The position numbers and the translations under genes are program-made. Shown here one piece after another: positions 17,703 through 58,400 of a stretch of 64,000 bases of DNA; positions within the stretch are counted from its first letter, which is position 1, and the number at the start of each line of letters is the position of its first letter. Under the pieces are notes generated by a model. That model was not told where the DNA came from. It did no database searches and worked only from the letters and a program-made list of their open reading frames with translations. Origin of the DNA: Octopus sinensis (taxonomy: Eukaryota); assembly GCF_006345805.1 (NCBI RefSeq), contig NC_043010.1, positions 61,070,001 to 61,134,000 of the forward strand, given 5' to 3'.

Positions 17703-20700
17703 TTAAATAGTGTGCCACAGGTAGTTAGTGACTGATGGAAATTCATGGATAGGTTTCTCAGCTTTGTCTCCTTCCTCTGCGTCTTCTTCTGTCCCTGCCG
17801 TCTCAGCTGACACAATATCTCCACCTTCCTGTAAGACATATTCTTCAGTCTTTGGAGAAACATCACACAACATGGTCAGTTCTTTCTCCCTCGCTTCCGT
17901 ATTGTTCTCATTCGCATTACCATTATCACTGCCGCCGTTATCATGAACCGAATCTTTATGAATTTGCAGCTTCTCCATATTTATAAATTTCCTACCACAG
18001 ATCTCGCAGGGGACAGGGTGTATCCCCATGTGGGTACGCAAGTGGATCTGCAGGGTGTCTTGGCGAGCAAATTTCTGACCACATTTTTCGCAATGGAATG
18101 GTTTCTCTCCGGTGTGTGTTCGTCTGTGAATCACCAAATAATTCCGCTGAGCAAAGTTCTTGTGGCAGATTTCACATTTGAAAGGCTTTTCTCCAGTATG
18201 AATTCGAAGATGAAGCTGCAGTGTATTTCGCTGTGAAAATTGCCTGCTACAATAATCACAACAAAATGGCTTTTCGCCCGAGTGTGTACGCTTGTGAATT
18301 TGAAGTTTGTCTTTCTGGGCAAACAGTTGGTTACAGATCTCACATTGGAATGGTTTTTCACCTGTGTGCGTTCGCTTGTGAACCTGAAGAGTATCTCTAC
18401 GAGCGAAGCGTTTCAGGCACACTTCACAGCTGAATGGTTTCTCTCCAGTATGAACCCGTTGATGAATATGAAGGTAATATTTCTGTGCAAATGGCTTCTG
18501 GCAATAATTACATTTGAATGGTTTCTCGTCTGAGTGCGACTGCATGTGGATGTGCAGATAATAGCGCTGAGCAAACTGTTTCTGACACACGTTGCACTGA
18601 TGCGATTTCTTGCGAATGTGTGTCCGTTTATGGATGTGCAACTTACTTCTCTGTGCAAACATCTTGTGACAAAAGTTACACTCGAACGGCTTTTCACCTG
18701 TGTGAATACGTCTGTGGATAACCAACGTATCTTTACGAGAAAACTTCTGAATACACATGTCACATTGAAATGGTTTCTCACCTGTATGACTACGCCTGTG
18801 AATTTGAAGGTAATCTTTATGGGTAAACTGTTCTTTACAGATATCACATTCATAATGTTTCTGGCCAGTGTGTGTCTTTTGATGGACCTGCAAGTAATGT
18901 CTCTGAGCAAAATGTTTGAAGCATATATCACATTTGAATGGCTTTTCATTGCTGTGAGTCTTTTCATGGATCAGCAAATAATGTTTTTGTGCAAAATGTT
19001 TCAGACAAATATCACACTGGAACGGTCTTTCGCCAGTGTGGGAGCGTCTGTGGATTTGTAGGGAGTCTTTCCGTACAAATTGTTTCGGACAGAGATCACA
19101 GTGGAACGGCTTCTCTCCTGTGTGTATACGGTGATGGATTTGTAAGTAATATCGCTGAGCAAACTGCTTCAGGCAGATCTTACACTGGAAGCTTTTCGCT
19201 GCGGAACCATTGCATTTGGAGTCAAAGTTAGAGTCATGACTATTTGACAAGTGGGGAGAATAATTATCGTTGAGGCTCAATTGAAATGGCTTGTCTTTTT
19301 TAAAATCGTCTTGTAGATCAGACGTTTCTAGGAATGAAGAATTTGCAAGTGAACAGTCGTTATAACTGTTCATGGTACTGAGAGATGGTTTTTCATCATG
19401 GTTGGAATTATTTTCCAGAGACAACTGCATTGGTGGATTCAAGGATTCTTGGAGAAATTCCTCCCCCTCAGTAGAAGTTTTGAGTAAATCAATTGATTTC
19501 TTATCCAAATCTATAAGCACCGGACCGACAGGCTCTTGGTGGTAATCCACAGGATAATCCTCTTTCTTATTGCAAACCAGATCGAGTTCTTTATCCTTAA
19601 CCACTGCATTAGAAATAGAAGACACCACAGGAGTGGAATGGTACACTGTTTCAGATGACAGATCATTGGAACCAACATTATTGAGCATTGATTTCTTTGA
19701 CACATCCAAAGGAGCATTTTGGTAATCAGAACTGTCGGCCATTTGTTTATTGTAAATGCTGGATTGAAATGTCTGAGTATGTTTATTTGGCATGAAGTGG
19801 TACCAGCTGGGTAAATTTTTGTCCCTTACAAAGCTGCTATGAACAGATATTGGTGGGTTGCTGTAGTCTTTGGGATAAATATTTTTGTCGTTGGCTTGAT
19901 GTGCTTGACTTATCTGAGACTTGGAAGTATAAAGGTGATTGCTAGTAGAAAAATCTTTACCGTCATACCGGTTACTAGAAATACCGTCTTTACCGATATT
20001 ATGTAAGAGATCTTTGTTGTAATGTTTATTGTCAATGGTGCTTTCTGTGTTAGAATAAAACTTAGCGGTCTTCATACTCTGGGAATATTCCCTGTTTTGT
20101 CTGCGATGGGATGATTTGTATGAAATTTGCTTCAATATGGGATATGTGTACCTTTGTATGGTCTCTTTAGAATAGTTGCTCTGAGATGAATCTTTAGTAA
20201 TTTCTGGAGATATCGAAGAATGTTGTTCCAAGTTGTTGGACAGATCTTCTTTGTAACTGCTATTTTGGTAGATTTTGTTGGTGCTGTCTTGACTTCTGGA
20301 TGTTGGAAGCCGTTGAGAGTAATCTTTAGGATAGGCATCACTTTGAGGCATTTTGCTGCTTGTTGTGGAACGAGATTTGTGATGCTGAGATTTCGAGTAT
20401 CTCAGAGAAAGATCTTTAGAATATAGGTCATTGTTCTGCACAGTTTTCTCGAGGCCAGAGGACATTCTTTGAGACAAATACGAATGTCTTTGGGCAAGTT
20501 CTTTGGAGTACAAATTTGAATGGAAAGCTTTTTCAACAAGATGGGGCAAATGTAAGGAAGATCTTTGGGCAAATTCTTTCAAATACATATTGGTATAAAA
20601 TGCTGTGTTATCAACTGCGTATGGAAGGCCAGTGATTGGTAAACTAGGTCTGCCATAAATATCAATTGGAAATGTTGGCTTCTCCATCAAGTTTGAAAAT

Positions 20701-20786
20701 TTCTGCATCTGTAAATTGTGTCTTTGGGGACAGTCTTGTCCACAAATCTTTGAACACAAACTTTTGTTGTCCGTATACTGTTCCAT
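17703..20786 (-). CDS. C2H2 zinc-finger protein, 1027 aa, 15 tandem fingers (aa ~533-948), single coding exon
   Basis: Uninterrupted 3084-bp ORF with 15 CxxC...HxxxH units at 28-aa spacing, mostly TGEKPF-type linkers, and an acidic C-terminal tail. Coleoid genomes are known for expanded C2H2 families. Confidence 0.96.
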   Translation of the reverse strand: MEQYTDNKSLCSKICGQDCPQRHNLQMQKFSNLMEKPTFPIDIYGRPSLPITGLPYAVDNTAFYTNMYLKEFAQRSSLHLPHLVEKAFHSNLYSKELAQRHSYLSQRMSSGLEKTVQNNDLYSKDLSLRYSKSQHHKSRSTTSSKMPQSDAYPKDYSQRLPTSRSQDSTNKIYQNSSYKEDLSNNLEQHSSISPEITKDSSQSNYSKETIQRYTYPILKQISYKSSHRRQNREYSQSMKTAKFYSNTESTIDNKHYNKDLLHNIGKDGISSNRYDGKDFSTSNHLYTSKSQISQAHQANDKNIYPKDYSNPPISVHSSFVRDKNLPSWYHFMPNKHTQTFQSSIYNKQMADSSDYQNAPLDVSKKSMLNNVGSNDLSSETVYHSTPVVSSISNAVVKDKELDLVCNKKEDYPVDYHQEPVGPVLIDLDKKSIDLLKTSTEGEEFLQESLNPPMQLSLENNSNHDEKPSLSTMNSYNDCSLANSSFLETSDLQDDFKKDKPFQLSLNDNYSPHLSNSHDSNFDSKCNGSAAKSFQCKICLKQFAQRYYLQIHHRIHTGEKPFHCDLCPKQFVRKDSLQIHRRSHTGERPFQCDICLKHFAQKHYLLIHEKTHSNEKPFKCDICFKHFAQRHYLQVHQKTHTGQKHYECDICKEQFTHKDYLQIHRRSHTGEKPFQCDMCIQKFSRKDTLVIHRRIHTGEKPFECNFCHKMFAQRSKLHIHKRTHIRKKSHQCNVCQKQFAQRYYLHIHMQSHSDEKPFKCNYCQKPFAQKYYLHIHQRVHTGEKPFSCEVCLKRFARRDTLQVHKRTHTGEKPFQCEICNQLFAQKDKLQIHKRTHSGEKPFCCDYCSRQFSQRNTLQLHLRIHTGEKPFKCEICHKNFAQRNYLVIHRRTHTGEKPFHCEKCGQKFARQDTLQIHLRTHMGIHPVPCEICGRKFINMEKLQIHKDSVHDNGGSDNGNANENNTEAREKELTMLCDVSPKTEEYVLQEGGDIVSAETAGTEEDAEEGDKAEKPIHEFPSVTNYLWHTI

Positions 20787-20990
20787 GTTAACATCAGCAG
20801 TGAAACATCAGCTTAAGACAACAAACTGAGCTGCAAGAAGTGAAGATATTTCACTGTTTGGATTGGCTGAGCCTTGCTTTATTTTTCTTCAAAACTTTGT
20901 AAAGAATAATTTACCAGAATTCAAATACCTCCAACTGGTTTTTATTTCACAGTTTGCAATTTGGAATCTAAAATAGGAAGAAAGAATCAC
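20787..20990 (-). promoter_or_regulatory. Candidate 3' splice site and 5'UTR part of the ZNF coding exon
   Basis: Minus strand reads TTCTTTCTTCCTATTTTAG|ATTCC (AG at 20968-20969), 181 nt upstream of the ATG. Confidence 0.55.
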
Positions 20991-21609
20991 AAATATTAGA
21001 AGAATAGAAAACTGTAATTGTTGGTTAAAATAAACACCAAAATCTGAGGGATCACACTTCTTGACCCTTTCCCCCACATGGTTATACATCAGTGCACACA
21101 CACACACACACTCTCTCTCTCTGCTGTTCCTTAATATCACTATTATTGAGCATATTCAACATTTCTGGACACTGTCCATCTCTATGTTTCTCTACCCTGA
21201 CAGAACACCCCAATCTACCCGTTTCTGACTTCTATTATTTCTATAACATTTGCATGGCATCAGAACTTTTTGCTTTTCTATTCTTTCTTCTACAACTTGA
21301 CAAAGAACCTGTACCTGCAACACCAATATTTCCCCTGACATTGTATTTATTTTCATTTTCTTGGGAAATGGTTAAAATGGAATAAAACTGGCAAAACTGC
21401 ATCGCAAAAACACAAAAGCTGAACAAAATATTTTGTCGTGAGGAAAAATAGACATTAAAGGTATCAAGCAGATCCTTTCACCATGAATAGAAGAATGTTT
21501 ACTGGGGAGGGTGGATAAATAGAAGGTGGTGGGGGAGGAAGGGGGAGATAACAAGTGTTAGTACGAGGGTAACAACCAGAGCAGATTCATATGCATTCGT
21601 GTGTGTGTG

Positions 21610-45861: not shown

Positions 45862-46422
45862 ATCAGGCAATCAACGAAATTAAGCTGGTCACTGGTTCCC
45901 CATCCACCGTACAGTCTGCATCTGGCACCATTCACCTTCCACTTGTGCAGCCTTCTGGCTTCCCAGATCCCCGGTCGAACCGTCCAACCCATGCTAGCAT
46001 GGAGAACGGACGTTAAACGATGATGATGATGATGATGATATCATGTATAAAAATATATTCTATACTCAAGCATTGTTCAACTAATGTAGAAGTGGGCCAT
46101 AACTTTTTTATTTACTGACATAGGTTAAGCTGCACATATTGGTAAAGTAACTCTTCCTTCATACAAATGTACTCCTCCTCCTCCTCTCCCTACAAGTGAT
46201 GCATTTATACTGTTGTTGAACTCAAGCTGTAAAACCTTTTTGTAAAAATTTGGGTTTGCAGATTTCTTCCAATTTTACTTTGTCTGTGTCATCAAATATT
46301 GTCCCTGAAAATATTGTCCTTCATTGGGCTGAACAAGTGGAAGGTGAATGGTGCCAGATGCAGACTGTACGGTGGATGGGGAACCAGTGACCAGCTTAAT
46401 TTCGTTGATTGCCTGATATATA

Positions 46423-46480
<58 letters not shown>

Positions 46481-46524
46481 AGTATATATATATGTGTGTG
46501 TGTGTATATATATATATATATGTG

Positions 46525-46622
<98 letters not shown>

Positions 46623-46664
46623 AGTATATATATATGTGTGTGTGTGTATATATATATATATGTG

Positions 46665-46751
<87 letters not shown>

Positions 46752-46788
46752 GTGTGTGTGTGTATATATATGTGTGTGTGTATATATA

Positions 46789-46836
<48 letters not shown>

Positions 46837-47085
46837 GTGTATATATATATATATGTGTATGTATGTATGTATATATATATTATATATATATACATACATA
46901 CATACATACATACATACATACATACATACATACATACACATATATATATATATATACACATATATATATATACACACACACACATATATATATATATACA
47001 TATATATTATATATATATATACACACACACACACATATATATATATACACATATATATATACACACACACACATATATATATACT

Positions 47086-47175
<90 letters not shown>

Positions 47176-47736
47176 TATATATCAGGCAATCAACGAAATT
47201 AAGCTGGTCACTGGTTCCCCATCCACCGTACAGTCTGCATCTGGCACCATTCACCTTCCACTTGTGCAGCCTTCTGGCTTCCCAGATCCCCGGTCGAACC
47301 GTCCAACCCATGCTAGCATGGAGAACGGACGTTAAACGATGATGATGATGATGATGATATCATGTATAAAAATATATTCTATACTCAAGCATTGTTCAAC
47401 TAATGTAGAAGTGGGCCATAACTTTTTTATTTACTGACATAGGTTAAGCTGCACATATTGGTAAAGTAACTCTTCCTTCATACAAATGTACTCCTCCTCC
47501 TCCTCTCCCTACAAGTGATGCATTTATACTGTTGTTGAACTCAAGCTGTAAAACCTTTTTGTAAAAATTTGGGTTTGCAGATTTCTTCCAATTTTACTTT
47601 GTCTGTGTCATCAAATATTGTCCCTGAAAATATTGTCCTTCATTGGGCTGAACAAGTGGAAGGTGAATGGTGCCAGATGCAGACTGTACGGTGGATGGGG
47701 AACCAGTGACCAGCTTAATTTCGTTGATTGCCTGAT
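45862..47736. repeat. Direct duplication (offset 1319 bp) of a 556-bp block embedded in (TA/CA)n
   Basis: 45862-46417 appears identical to 47181-47736. Each block has a mariner fragment (+), a SINE tail, and the mariner C-terminus plus end on - (46089-46417; 47408-47736). Confidence 0.92.
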
Positions 47737-54826: not shown

Positions 54827-54959
54827 CTGTACAAATACATATTAGATAAAAAAAGGAAAGACAGGAAGACGACGGACAGAAAGAAAGAAAGAATGAAGTG
54901 GGAAGAATTAGAATATCCAGACAACCATCTGTCGCATGTAGCCATATATACATCCGTAG

Positions 54960-55052
54960 CAGATTTAAACACACACACATCAACATATCAATATATATAC
55001 ATACACACACGTTAATATATATACACATATCAATATATATATACACATATCA

Positions 55053-55087
<35 letters not shown>

Positions 55088-55401
55088 TCAATATATATAC
55101 ACATATCAATATATATACACACACACAATATATATATATACACACACACAACAATATATATACACACACAATATATATATACACACACACACAACAATAT
55201 ATATATACACACACACACACACACATCAATATATATACACATATCAATATATATACACACACACAACAATATATATACACACACAATATATATATACACA
55301 CACACACAATATATATACACACACAATATATATATACACACACACACAACAATATATATATACACACATACATACAACAATATATACACACACACACAAC
55401 A

Positions 55402-55432
<31 letters not shown>

Positions 55433-58400
55433 ATATATATATACACACACATACAACAATATATACACACACAACAATATATATACACACACACAATATA
55501 TATACACACAACAATATATATACACACATACAACAATATATATACACACACACAATATATATACACACACACAACAATATATATACACACACAATATATA
55601 TATATATACACACACATACAATATATATACACACACAACAATATACACACACACATACAACAATATATATACACACATAAATCAATATCTACACACACAC
55701 AAACACACACACATATATCAGCATATGTGTATATACATATATTCATGAACACAGACATATACAAATATATATACGCAAACATACATTATACAGACACATA
55801 ATGTGTAGTGTAGGCATACTTTAACATTCAAGCACATCTGTACTCTGTGTGTGTGTGTGAGTGTATATACAGACATATGTAGATGTTCGTAGTATTCGAT
55901 AAACATGTAGACAGGCAATATACATACACCGTGTGTGTGTGTGATTATATACCCGAATGATGTGTGTGCGGGTGCATGTCTATGCAGCTAAGCCGACACT
56001 TCGAAGTCACTGTCAACATTTTCCTTGAAAAATAAAATGAATCTAAGACTATTGAAATATATTCAATATTCCAACAAATGTTGACTTTGTGTGTATGAGT
56101 GGGTATATATATGTGCATGTATGTATGTATATGTATGTGTGTGTATGTATGTGTGTATGAGTGTGTGTATATATGTGTATGTATGTGTATGAGTGTATAT
56201 ATATGTATATGTATGTATGTGTGTGTATATATATGTATATATATGTATGTGTGTGTATGAGTGTATATATATATATGTATATGTATGTATGTGTGTGTGT
56301 ATGAGTGTGTATATATATGTATGTATGTGTGTGTGTATGAGTGTGTGCGTTGATATATGTTGATATGCTACGAGTGTATAATTATACACATTCGGAGCAT
56401 ATATATATATATATATATATAACTCAAATAGTATATTTGTTGTATAGACAGACAGACATACAGAGACGGACAGAAATATATATATATATATATACACATA
56501 TAGACACACAAATATACATATAAACAAATATATATATATACACACACATATGTATAGACATAGATGTATAAATATACACATACACAAACAATTATACATA
56601 CATATAAATTTTACACACAGACACATAAACAACTGTACATAGACGCACACAAGTACACACACACACCTATATACGCAATATATCTACATATATATACAAA
56701 CAAATATATAGACACATATTAACATACATACCAACGGGAACCTTCAGAAATCAGGTAACTACAAGGAGGAGGAGCGATACATACAGACATGTATACACAC
56801 ACACATACACACTGGAGAGTATATAGTCATACACACAATACAGTGTACACTCATCATACACAACACGTAGCTTGGAAAACACACACACATACACATAACT
56901 ACATGCATGAGGAGCAAACGCACACACAGACACAGCATACCTAGACACACTCAGTTTATACACACACACATACACACACGCATACAGACACAGCATATCT
57001 AGACACACTCAGTTTATACACACACACGCATACAGACACAGCATATCTACAGACATACGTTTACATATTGACACACAAACGCACACACAGACACAGTATA
57101 TCTACAAGCACACACACACACATACACAGGTTCAGCATATGCAGACACACATACGCACACACACCAGCCACTGCACACCTACATATTGACACACATACGC
57201 ACACACACACAGCCTGCCTACAACAGATACGCACAAACGTAACATATGCAAATACACGCCTACATATTAACATGCTCACGCACACACAGACACAGCATAT
57301 CTACACACACACACACACCTACATACTGAGAATACGTACACACTAACATATCTACAAGCATATTCACAAACGCACACACAGACACAGCCCATCGACACGC
57401 ACTGCATATCTACAAGCACGCATAAACGCACACAGACACAGCATATTTGCATACACACACAGAGCATATACAAACATATTTACATATCGACATACAAACG
57501 CACACACAGACACACAGCATATCCACAAACGCACACACAGACACAACGCATATGTAAATACAAACACCCACATATGTAAATACAAACGCACACACACACA
57601 CAGCATATCTACAGACGCACACACAGACACAGCATGTCCAAATACACACACACATTTACACATCGACATACAGACGCACACACATACGTACACACAGACA
57701 CAGCGCATATACAAACACCCACATTTACATATCGACAAACAAACGCACACACAGACACACAGCATATCTACAGCCGTACACACAGACACACAGCATATCC
57801 ACAGACGCACACACAGACACAGCATGTACAAATACACACACACATTTGCATATCGACATACAGACGCACACACAGACACACAGCGCATATATACAAACAC
57901 CCACATTTACATATCGACATACAAACGTTCACACAGACACAGTGCATATCCACAGACGCACACACAGACATAGCATGTACAAATACAAACACACACACAC
58001 ACACATTTGCATATCGACATACAAACGTACACACAGCATATCCACAGCTACAACGACACACATACACTCACACACACACATATATATATATATATACACA
58101 TACGTACACACACACAGACAGTTACATGTGTCAAATACAAATTCTCTCCTCCTCACCCATCCCCCCACACATACATGCACACAGTTTGCATGGAACCTCG
58201 CGCGCGCGCGCACTCTCTCTCTCACACACACACACACTCGTTTCTTTCCGTCTACATTCCATCGGCTGGCTTAAATAGACACATATGTATATACAGACAT
58301 GTACATACACACATACATACGCAGACATGTACATACACACACACATACGCAGACGTCTACATACACACATACATACGCAGACGTGTACATACACACATAC

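What the first reader, a model, noticed from the sequence alone, without database searches (positions are those of the whole stretch)
19857..20756. N-terminal third of the ZNF protein is a fossil zinc-finger array kept in frame
Seen: aa 11-310 contain about 10 Y-x-K-[DE] repeats at aa 68, 93, 122, 152, 178, 205, 234, 256, 274 and 304 (spacing mostly 25-30 aa; the finger period is 28). They align with the intact fingers: TAFYTNMYLKEFAQR and EKAFHSNLYSKELAQR versus EKPFQCNVCQKQFAQR, and SKICGQDCPQRHNLQM..MEKPTF versus CKICLKQFAQRYYLQI..GEKPF. The second Cys is repeatedly Tyr (one base from TGY) and the His ligands are lost. Inference: an old finger array lost zinc binding but was retained stop-free, and may have become a new Tyr-repeat, probably disordered, effector region. 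This would be a route to new domains in cephalopod ZNFs.
Basis: partly seen in the sequence, partly recalled or inferred. Interest (0 to 1): 0.75.

Follow-up and report, generated by a model that had tools for sequence, protein, structure and literature searches.

The report
Decayed zinc fingers reused as tyrosine repeat
The front third of a conserved octopus 15-finger DNA-binding protein is a run of about a dozen former zinc fingers that lost their metal-binding residues, yet selection has preserved it across cephalopods as a regularly spaced tyrosine-lysine-acid motif, so a dead finger array appears to have been reused as a different protein region.

Summary
The window is Octopus sinensis. 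The ORF 17703-20786 (- strand, 1027 aa) is the annotated single-ORF CDS of a ZNF with 15 intact C2H2 fingers (aa 533-948).

- **Motif count:** aa 1-364 hold 7 strict Y-x-K-[DE] motifs, not 10. Expected by chance: 0.32 (0/20000 shuffles). Spacings are 25-30 aa or about twice that.
- **Finger homology:** aa 1-330 align collinearly with the protein's own finger array. Smith-Waterman scores 100 against 39±6 for shuffles in octopus, and 133 against 40±7 in a distant ortholog. Tyr sits on the second-Cys column and E-K on the linker.
- **Selection:** the region is not drifting. dN/dS is 0.21 (O. bimaculoides) and 0.15 (Argonauta), against 0.01-0.02 for the fingers.
- **Motif conservation:** in a distant ortholog (35% identical here, synonymous sites saturated) Tyr, Lys and the acidic residue are kept in 23/27 cells, against 62/162 elsewhere.
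- **Residual cysteines:** extra Cys in other lineages fall on ligand columns (p=0.005).

The function is inferred: a non-zinc, probably flexible, multivalent interaction arm. Degenerate fingers are well known; a whole decayed array conserved as a Tyr motif repeat is a new variant of that kind. Interest is moderate.

The parts
17703..20786 (-). Whole CDS of the ZNF (1027 aa plus stop), a single ORF. It is identical to the annotated O. vulgaris 'zinc finger protein 45-like' apart from one residue, and 98% identical to O. bimaculoides XP_014771526.1.
19695..20765 (-). Fossil finger array, aa 8-364: 13 units of 18-41 aa (mostly 24-30).
20682..20768 (-). Unit 1 (aa 7-35): NKSLCSKICGQDCPQRHNLQMQKFSNLME. 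It keeps Cys at the second-Cys column (C15). C11, C15 and C19 are invariant in all five orthologs; H23 is kept in all except Argonauta, which has a 3-aa gap there.
20610..20681 (-). Unit Y44 (aa 36-59): KPTFPIDIYGRP... It is decayed in octopus but a clean SDIYSKEFLQRHS in the distant ortholog.
20535..20609 (-). Unit Y68 (aa 60-84): NTAFYTNMYLKEFAQRSSLHLPHLV. This is the most finger-like unit (best finger-HMM hit) and keeps H79 and H82.
20448..20534 (-). Unit Y93 (aa 85-113): EKAFHSNLYSKELAQRHSYLSQRMSSGLE. It matches finger-HMM columns 1-20, with Y93 on the second-Cys column and EK on the linker.
20358..20447 (-). Unit Y122 (aa 114-143), core NDLYSKDLSLR. Y, K and the acidic residue are invariant.
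20280..20357 (-). Unit Y152 (aa 144-169), core SDAYPKDYSQR. The distant ortholog has Cys at the Tyr position (DRCQKEYAHR). Argonauta has Cys at the first-Cys position (QCDTY).
20199..20279 (-). Unit Y178 (aa 170-196), core SSYKEDLSNN, with the motif shifted by one residue. Y178, K179 and D181 are invariant.
20112..20198 (-). Unit Y205 (aa 197-225), core SNYSKETIQR. Y205, E208, Q211 and R212 are invariant.
19902..20111 (-). Units Y234, Y256 and Y274 (aa 226-295). These are the weakest units, null-like against fingers outside the motif columns. Y256 and K258 are invariant. Unit 234 is an intact NIYTKDFSLK in the distant ortholog. Argonauta has Cys three residues before Y274.
19695..19901 (-). 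Units Y304 (NIYPKDYSNP) and Y345 (TFQSSIYNKQMA), aa 296-364. The Tyr is kept in octopods but is Val in the distant ortholog.
19191..19505 (-). aa 428-532: a zone with linker-like DKK428, EKP465 and DKP498 at spacings of 33-37 aa. The distant ortholog has [EDN]KP four times at spacings of 29, 31 and 29. These are possible linker-only finger relics; there is no finger-body similarity.
17943..19190 (-). Intact array of 15 C2H2 fingers (aa 533-948), under very strong constraint (dN/dS 0.01-0.02).
17715..17756 (-). C-terminal motif KPIHEFPSVTNYLW (aa 1011-1024), conserved in all orthologs. It confirms 1:1 orthology.

Best explanation
The gene is a conserved, single-exon cephalopod C2H2 protein. It once carried at least about 27 tandem fingers. 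The C-terminal 15 are intact and bind DNA in the usual way.

The N-terminal 12-13 units (aa 8-364) lost their zinc ligands before octopods split from the lineage of a distant cephalopod ortholog. The first Cys became assorted polar residues, the second Cys became Tyr (TGY to TAY), and the His pair was lost. These units can no longer be classical fingers.

The relic did not drift away. Selection kept one short motif per old finger period, about [DN]-[ILM]-Y-x-K-[DE]-[FYL]-x-Q-R, often preceded by the old E-K linker. The spacers between motifs diverged.

The most likely mode of action is a zinc-free, largely flexible arm that presents about 10 regularly spaced Tyr/Lys/acid short motifs. This would be a multivalent docking or self-association surface recruiting partners to the sites bound by the 15 fingers.

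Shown: homology to the fingers, loss of ligands, purifying selection, motif-focused conservation and deep age. Inferred: flexibility, and the interaction or effector role.
For: **Identity of the gene.** Octopus sinensis chromosome CM016872.1. The annotated orthologs are 1027-1028 aa and start at the same Met.

**Motif excess.** 7 Y-x-K-[DE] against 0.32 expected, 0/20000 shuffles. The same excess occurs in Argonauta (6) and in the distant ortholog P0004 (7).

**Array-level homology.**
- Smith-Waterman of aa 1-330 against the protein's own fingers: 100 vs 39±6.4 (z 9.5) in octopus, 99 vs 41±7.5 in Argonauta, 133 vs 40±7 (z 13) in P0004.
- aa 331 to the first finger gives nothing.
- Reversed and window-shuffled controls reach at most 72.
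- tblastn of the finger array hits window 20136-20792 at E 2.6e-5 to 3e-4.
- A finger HMM aligns HLVEKAFHSNLYSKELAQRH to columns 1-20, with Tyr on the second Cys. Shuffles reach the score 0/2000, 1/2000 and 24/2000 times in the three species.
- Core similarity to the fingers with the Y, K and D/E columns excluded: -1.6 against a null of -12.3±2.0.

**Selection.**
- aa 1-310 has omega 0.21 against O. bimaculoides (15 nonsynonymous, 16 synonymous; p=5.8e-5).
- Omega is 0.15 against Argonauta (p=3e-22).
- Flanking DNA is about 12% diverged, comparable to dS.

**Motif-specific constraint.** Between octopus and P0004 the region is 35% identical with saturated synonymous sites. Y, K and the acidic residue are conserved as classes in 23/27 cells against 62/162 at other offsets (p=4.6e-6), with D/E swaps. 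Seven anchor Tyr are invariant in all five sequences.

**Residual ligands.** 3 of 6 stray Cys in Argonauta and P0004 lie on ligand-equivalent columns (p=0.0045). Unit 152 is Cys in P0004 and Tyr in octopods.

**Contrast between the two Cys columns.** The first-Cys column is now I, T, S, N, S, N, Q, N, N, S, K, S, while the second-Cys column is Tyr in 12/12 units.

**No confident fold.** AlphaFold2 of aa 1-230 gives pLDDT 38 and pTM 0.14.
Against: - Generic models do not see the homology: Pfam zf-C2H2 gives no hit at E<=10.
- A profile-profile comparison of Tyr units against fingers is weak: hhalign E 0.014, 0.08 with the motif masked, and not significant once units 44, 68 and 93 are removed. 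Units beyond aa ~215 are therefore tied to fingers only through their likeness to the better-preserved units, their period and their position.
- Anchor Tyr are not significantly better conserved than other Tyr (7/12 vs 4/15, p=0.10).
- No outgroup with intact fingers at these positions was found, so the direction Cys-to-Tyr at unit 152 is inferred.
- Disorder is not established. The full-length AlphaFold run also failed on the real fingers (pLDDT 40-48), and the charge-hydropathy proxy does not separate the region from the fingers.
- There is no functional or expression data at all.
- The species of the distant ortholog (Logan runs ERR3431203 and ERR12370320) is unknown.
Confidence: 0.7

Rival explanations
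1. One finger degenerated once, acquiring Tyr at the second Cys and an acidic residue after Lys. That already-dead unit was then amplified in tandem. On this reading the Tyr repeat is a new repeat family born from a single finger, not ten fingers that each decayed.
For: All units share derived states that none of the 15 intact fingers has: Tyr at the anchor and D/E at +3. Tandem duplication is the normal way finger arrays grow (established knowledge). Units 68 and 93 share a 17/18-nt identical stretch.
Against: - With the motif columns excluded, Tyr units are no closer to each other (-0.96) than to the fingers (-1.63).
- Unit 1 and, in other lineages, units 152 and 274 still carry Cys on ligand columns (p=0.0045). 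This fits separate, lineage-specific decay with parallel Cys-to-Tyr changes better.
- All units are positionally orthologous in the distant ortholog, so any amplification is ancient and can no longer be traced.
Confidence: 0.25
2. The units are still small folded modules, either zinc-independent or using other ligand sets such as C11/C15/C19/H23 in unit 1. They would extend or modulate nucleic-acid binding by the array rather than act as a flexible interaction arm.
For: Unit 1 keeps three invariant Cys in all orthologs, and H23 in all except Argonauta. Unit 68 keeps H79 and H82. AlphaFold places low-confidence helices over the cores of units 68, 93 and 122, where a finger helix would lie. The phosphate-contacting Lys after the second Cys is retained.
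Against: No unit other than unit 1 has more than two possible ligands. pLDDT is below 50 nearly everywhere and pTM is 0.14. Spacer lengths vary from 18 to 41 aa and spacer sequence is poorly conserved. Omega is about 10 times higher than in the real fingers.
Confidence: 0.12
3. The Tyr repeat has nothing to do with fingers. It is an independent tandem repeat whose K, Q-R and E-K residues resemble the finger consensus by chance or by composition.
For: Pfam finds nothing. The profile-profile comparison is weak. Units after aa ~215 show no finger signal of their own.
Against: - The collinear alignment over about 8 units has z 9.5-13 and survives composition-preserving local shuffles and reversal.
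- The register is exact: E-K at -8, Tyr on the second Cys, K at +2, aromatic at +4, Q-R at +6/+7.
- The period is that of a finger.
- Stray Cys fall on ligand columns.
- The region directly adjoins a finger array in the same exon.
Confidence: 0.04
4. The region is non-functional: a neutrally decaying leftover, or wrongly annotated as coding, that happens to be stop-free.
For: It evolves faster than the fingers (15 of the 25 amino-acid differences from O. bimaculoides lie in aa 1-310) and has no recognised domain.
Against: Omega of 0.15-0.21 rejects neutrality (p=5.8e-5 and 3e-22). The frame, start codon and motifs are kept, with only in-frame indels, in lineages whose synonymous sites are saturated. 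The annotated proteins start at the same Met.
Confidence: 0.02

Closest known systems
Degenerate C2H2 fingers in poly-zinc-finger proteins (annotated 'C2H2-type; degenerate' in UniProt; described for KRAB-ZNFs, e.g. PMC2865497, and for PRDM9/PRDM7, PMC7943923)
   Same: These are finger-derived units inside the ORF of a multi-finger protein. They lack one or more Cys/His ligands, are often at the edge of the array and are kept in frame.
   Different: In the known cases these are usually single or a few units lacking one ligand, treated as non-functional or transitional. Here a whole run of 12-13 units has lost essentially all ligands. It shares one replacement (Tyr) and a new acidic position. 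It shows purifying selection focused on that new motif, across lineages with saturated synonymous sites.
Canonical C2H2 zinc finger (Pfam PF00096), as in the same protein's aa 533-948
   Same: The period is about 28 aa. Shared features are the E-K linker, aromatic residues at -5 and +4, Lys at +2, Q-R at +6/+7 and Leu at +10, and the units are collinear with the array.
   Different: There is no Cys pair and no His pair, there is no Pfam hit, and dN/dS is about 10 times higher. The units cannot coordinate zinc in the classical way.
Tyrosine-'sticker' low-complexity domains of FUS-family proteins (working analogy only, from general knowledge)
   Same: Regularly spaced Tyr in a polar, Ser/Asn/Gln-rich, Gly- and aliphatic-poor context attached to a nucleic-acid-binding module. 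Multivalency is plausible.
   Different: There are no [G/S]Y[G/S] motifs, Gly is 2%, and 22% of residues are charged. Tyr sits in a longer conserved motif with Lys and an acidic residue. There is no evidence of condensation.
Effector regions of poly-ZNF proteins (KRAB, SCAN, BTB, ZAD) placed N-terminal to the finger array
   Same: The position and the presumed logic are the same: a non-DNA-binding N-terminal module joined to a C-terminal finger array.
   Different: Those are independently folded domains of separate origin, usually on separate exons. Here the module is made from the array itself, in the same exon, and matches no Pfam family.

Membership tests
C2H2 zinc finger (PF00096), applied to the N-terminal units | Cys-x2-4-Cys pair | tested here: not met
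   The second-Cys column is Tyr in 12 units and the first-Cys column is I/T/S/N/Q/K. Only unit 1 has Cys there (C11-x3-C15).
C2H2 zinc finger (PF00096), applied to the N-terminal units | His-x3-5-His pair 12 residues after the second Cys | tested here: not met
   The regex C..C.{12}H.{3,5}H matches only aa 535-948. Unit 68 keeps H79 and H82, but at the wrong spacing.
C2H2 zinc finger (PF00096), applied to the N-terminal units | Match to the family profile at or above the gathering score | tested here: not met
   No Pfam family at E<=10 for aa 1-310, aa 311-529 or the N-terminus of P0004.
C2H2 zinc finger (PF00096), applied to the N-terminal units | Common descent with bona fide fingers (sequence homology to the protein's own array) | tested here: met
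   Smith-Waterman z 9.5, 7.7 and 13 in three orthologs, with controls. tblastn E 2.6e-5. Finger HMM 0/2000 shuffles.
C2H2 zinc finger (PF00096), applied to the N-terminal units | Zinc binding and beta-beta-alpha fold | not testable with these tools
   The AlphaFold runs were low confidence. Metal analysis and spectroscopy are needed.
Degenerate (ligand-deficient) zinc finger within a poly-ZNF ORF | Finger-derived unit in frame with an intact array and lacking at least one ligand | tested here: met
Degenerate (ligand-deficient) zinc finger within a poly-ZNF ORF | Relaxed or absent constraint, as expected for a non-functional relic | tested here: not met
   Omega is 0.15-0.21, significantly below 1, with motif-focused conservation.
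FUS-like Tyr-rich prion-like low-complexity domain | [G/S]-Y-[G/S] repeats, Gly/Ser/Gln/Asn-rich, few charged residues | tested here: not met
   0 [GS]Y[GS] motifs, Gly 1.9%, charged residues 22% in aa 1-364.
SUMOylation consensus repeat (psi-K-x-[DE]) | Hydrophobic residue directly before Lys and an acidic residue two after it | tested here: not met
   No [VILMFA]K.[DE] in aa 1-364. The acidic residue directly follows Lys.

The most novel reading that the evidence does not exclude
A complete block of about 12 zinc fingers was converted, unit by unit and partly in parallel in different cephalopod lineages, from a metal-dependent DNA-reading module into a new conserved Tyr-Lys-acid short-motif repeat with its own function. 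This would be a documented case of a protein domain array being exapted in place into a different kind of functional region. The same signature (Tyr on the second-Cys column, at the finger period) may then mark many of the roughly 1800 expanded cephalopod ZNFs and supply them with effector regions they otherwise appear to lack.
Probability: 0.3. Interest if true: 0.7.

Novelty: new variant of a known kind. Interest (0 to 1): 0.5.

Why it matters
Cephalopods have a very large C2H2 ZNF repertoire. A recent survey of these expansions does not use the terms N-terminal, effector, degenerate or disordered (PMC12513265).

This gene gives a concrete and testable example of how such a region can arise: from the finger array itself, with no exon shuffling. 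The example is old, single-copy and selected.

It also gives a simple sequence signature to screen for: the finger period, Tyr on the second-Cys column, Lys at +2 and an acidic residue at +3. More generally it cautions that 'degenerate fingers' should not be written off as junk.

It does not overturn anything. Degenerate fingers and the reuse of decayed repeats are accepted ideas.

Tried and rejected
- **Tandem Repeats Finder on the DNA** and blastn between the N-terminal and finger DNA found no DNA-level repeat. The relationship is visible only at protein level.
- **Pfam at E<=10** found nothing.
- **hhalign of a Tyr-unit profile against a finger profile** was weak. I rely instead on array-level alignment statistics.
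- **The search for homologous proteins** with the octopus N-terminus alone returned nothing, not even the protein itself. With the C-terminal tail profile it also returned nothing, so no outgroup ortholog was obtained. The profile search added only Argonauta.
- **The exhaustive representative search** found only two clusters.
- **The species of the distant ortholog** could not be identified; the accession numbers appear in no paper.
- **AlphaFold2 on the full protein** failed even on the real fingers, so it cannot be used as evidence of disorder. The aa 1-230 run is low confidence.
- **The Uversky charge-hydropathy proxy** does not discriminate.
- **Other repeat types were rejected:** SUMO-consensus and FUS-like [G/S]Y[G/S] readings of the motif, neutral decay and a chance open frame.
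Full report
**What is there.** The window comes from Octopus sinensis chromosome CM016872.1 (assembly GCA_006345805.1). The finding lies in one long ORF, window 17703-20786 on the minus strand, 1027 aa. This ORF equals the annotated protein in O. vulgaris (CAI9733419.1, 'zinc finger protein 45-like', one residue different). It is 98% identical to O. bimaculoides XP_014771526.1, and all start at the same Met. Residues 533-948 are 15 canonical C2H2 fingers. No other finger sequence lies in the 64 kb.

**Checking the observation.**
- Strict Y-x-K-[DE] occurs seven times (aa 68, 93, 122, 152, 205, 256, 304), not ten.
- Site 178 is Y-K-E-D, 274 is Y-D-G-K-D and 234 is Y-S-Q-S.
- Seven is far above the 0.32 expected from composition (0/20000 shuffles). 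The motif is absent from the rest of the protein.
- Spacings are 25, 29 and 30 aa, then 53, 51 and 48 aa, which is one or two finger periods.
The array therefore spans about aa 8-364 (window 19695-20765), in 13 units of 18-41 aa.
- Anchor Tyr codons are all TAY and finger Cys codons all TGY.
- One quoted finger string (EKPFQCNVCQKQFAQR) is a composite, not a literal sequence.

**Is it really finger-derived?** Generic tools say nothing. Pfam gives no hit at E<=10 and there is no DNA-level repeat. Comparison with the protein's own fingers is clear:
- An HMM of its fingers hits aa 13-26, 69-80 and 95-101. aa 1-310 beat 1000/1000 shuffles, while aa 311-530 do not.
- A linker-first version of the HMM aligns HLVEKAFHSNLYSKELAQRH to columns 1-20 (H-T-G-E-K-P-F-x-C-x-x-C-x-K-x-F-x-Q-R-x). 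This puts Tyr93 on the second Cys. Shuffles reach the observed score 0/2000 (octopus), 1/2000 (Argonauta) and 24/2000 (distant ortholog) times.
- The strongest test is a gapped alignment of aa 1-330 to the whole finger array. It scores 100 against 39±6.4 for shuffles in octopus (z 9.5, Gumbel p about 3e-6). It scores 99 vs 41±7.5 in Argonauta and 133 vs 40±7 (z 13) in the distant ortholog. The alignment is collinear over about eight units.
- Reversed sequences (at most 52) and shuffles within 10- or 28-residue windows (maximum 72) do not approach these scores.
- tblastn finds the same relationship on its own, at E 2.6e-5 to 3e-4.
- With the Y, K and D/E columns removed, unit cores still resemble fingers (-1.6 against a null of -12.3±2.0). 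There is a gradient from units 68 and 93 (very finger-like) to units 234, 256 and 274 (null-like).
- A profile-profile comparison is only weakly significant and depends on units 44, 68 and 93.

The later units are therefore linked to fingers by transitivity, period and position rather than directly.

**Orthologs.** An exhaustive search with the N-terminal 530 aa found only the Octopus cluster and one distant protein. That protein is P0004 (1059 aa, from Logan assemblies of ERR3431203 and ERR12370320, species unknown). A profile search added Argonauta hians. All have the same 15 fingers and the same C-terminal KPIHEFPSVT[NS]YLW, so they are 1:1 orthologs.

Identity to octopus by region:

| Region | Argonauta | P0004 |
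|---|---|---|
| aa 1-310 | 73% | 35% |
| Fingers (aa 533-948) | 95% | 71% |

Synonymous sites against P0004 are saturated (pS 0.92-0.97), so the split is deep.

The repeat register is conserved across this split. Tyr 44, 68, 93, 122, 178, 205 and 256 are invariant in all five sequences. P0004 has cleaner copies (SDIYSKEFLQRHS, SDIYSKEYLQRHS, ELYNKEYMQR, NTYSKEYIQR) and clearer E-K linkers. Between octopus and P0004, the Y, K and acidic positions are conserved as classes in 23/27 cells, against 62/162 at other offsets (p=4.6e-6). D/E swaps point to selection on charge.

**Selection.**

| Comparison | Region | dN/dS | Test against neutrality |
|---|---|---|---|
| O. bimaculoides | aa 1-310 | 0.21 (15 nonsyn, 16 syn) | p=5.8e-5 |
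| O. bimaculoides | aa 311-532 | 0.06 | - |
| O. bimaculoides | fingers | 0.01 | - |
| Argonauta | aa 1-310 | 0.15 | p=3e-22 |
| Argonauta | fingers | 0.02 | - |

Flanking DNA is about 12% diverged from O. bimaculoides, in line with dS. The relic is therefore constrained, about ten times less tightly than the fingers.

**One decay or many?** All Tyr units share Tyr and an acidic residue that no intact finger has. This would fit amplification of a single dead unit. Three observations point the other way:
- Unit 1 keeps Cys at the second-Cys column (C15), with C11 and C19 also invariant.
- P0004 has Cys where octopods have Tyr152.
- Argonauta has Cys three residues before Tyr152 and before Tyr274.

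Three of six stray cysteines lie on the 6.4% of columns that correspond to ligands (p=0.0045). This favours fingers that were still losing ligands after the lineages split, with Cys-to-Tyr happening more than once. Without an outgroup the direction remains inferred. The first-Cys column decayed to assorted polar residues while the second-Cys column is uniformly Tyr, so in either scenario Tyr is selected.

**How it probably works.** Without ligand sets the units cannot be classical fingers. AlphaFold2 of aa 1-230 gives no confident fold (pLDDT 38, pTM 0.14), with only low-confidence helices over the unit cores. The full-length run failed even on the true fingers and is uninformative. The region is Ser/Lys/Gln/Asn/Tyr-rich with 2% Gly and 22% charged residues. 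It does not match FUS-type or SUMO-consensus patterns.

My best reading is a flexible arm that carries about ten copies of a short Tyr/Lys/acid motif and acts as a multivalent docking or self-association surface for the DNA-bound protein. This step is inference; nothing here measures binding, disorder or activity.

**Comparison with what is known.** Degenerate fingers inside poly-ZNF ORFs are well documented (PMC2865497, PMC7943923). They are generally described as single, non-functional units. The recent survey of cephalopod C2H2 expansions does not use the terms degenerate, N-terminal, effector or disordered (PMC12513265). I found no report of a whole decayed array conserved as a Tyr motif repeat. 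The literature search covered open-access text only. I class this as a new variant of a known kind, of moderate interest.

**Side observations.**
- Linker-like [EDN]KP relics lie at the finger period just before the first intact finger. In P0004 the spacings are 29, 31 and 29 (0/20000 shuffles give this). This hints that nearly the whole N-terminal half was once fingers.
- The C-terminal motif is conserved.
- Unit 1 carries a C-x3-C-x3-C-x3-H pattern; the three Cys are invariant and the His is kept in all orthologs except Argonauta.
- The 303 nt upstream of the start codon are more conserved than the other flanks.

Noticed in passing
window 17715-17756 (- strand; aa 1011-1024): The C-terminal motif KPIHEFPSVT[NS]YLW is nearly invariant in Octopus, Argonauta and the distant ortholog, while the rest of the tail diverges. 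It has no Pfam match and may be a short docking motif.
   Followed up: partly
window 20718-20756 (- strand; aa 11-23): Unit 1 carries a C-x3-C-x3-C-x3-H pattern (C11, C15, C19, H23). The three Cys are invariant in all five orthologs; H23 falls in a 3-aa gap in Argonauta. It could be a residual or alternative metal site, unlike the Tyr units.
   Followed up: no
window 19191-19505 (- strand; aa 428-532); L004 protein aa 464-556: Linker-like [EDN]KP tripeptides lie at the finger period just before the first intact finger. In the distant ortholog the spacings are 29, 31 and 29 (0/20000 shuffles give this). In octopus DKK428, EKP465 and DKP498 are 33-37 aa apart. The finger bodies are unrecognisable. 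This suggests still older, linker-only finger relics.
   Followed up: partly
   Followed up: yes
window 20787-21089: The 303 nt directly upstream of the start codon are 96% identical between O. sinensis and O. bimaculoides, against about 88% for the other alignable flanks. This is probably a conserved 5'UTR or core promoter.
   Followed up: no
window 46275-47342 and 54898-58278: Long dinucleotide-type simple-repeat tracts give spurious 180-300-aa ORFs rich in Y/I/C/V/T/H on both strands. These are not genes.
   Followed up: no
L006 (Argonauta hians) and L004 (distant ortholog), N-terminal region: Stray cysteines in other lineages sit on ligand-equivalent columns: Argonauta QCDTY and NCNRY, and the distant ortholog DRCQKEY and EICYKD. 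P0005 also has DNCERNC.
   Followed up: yes
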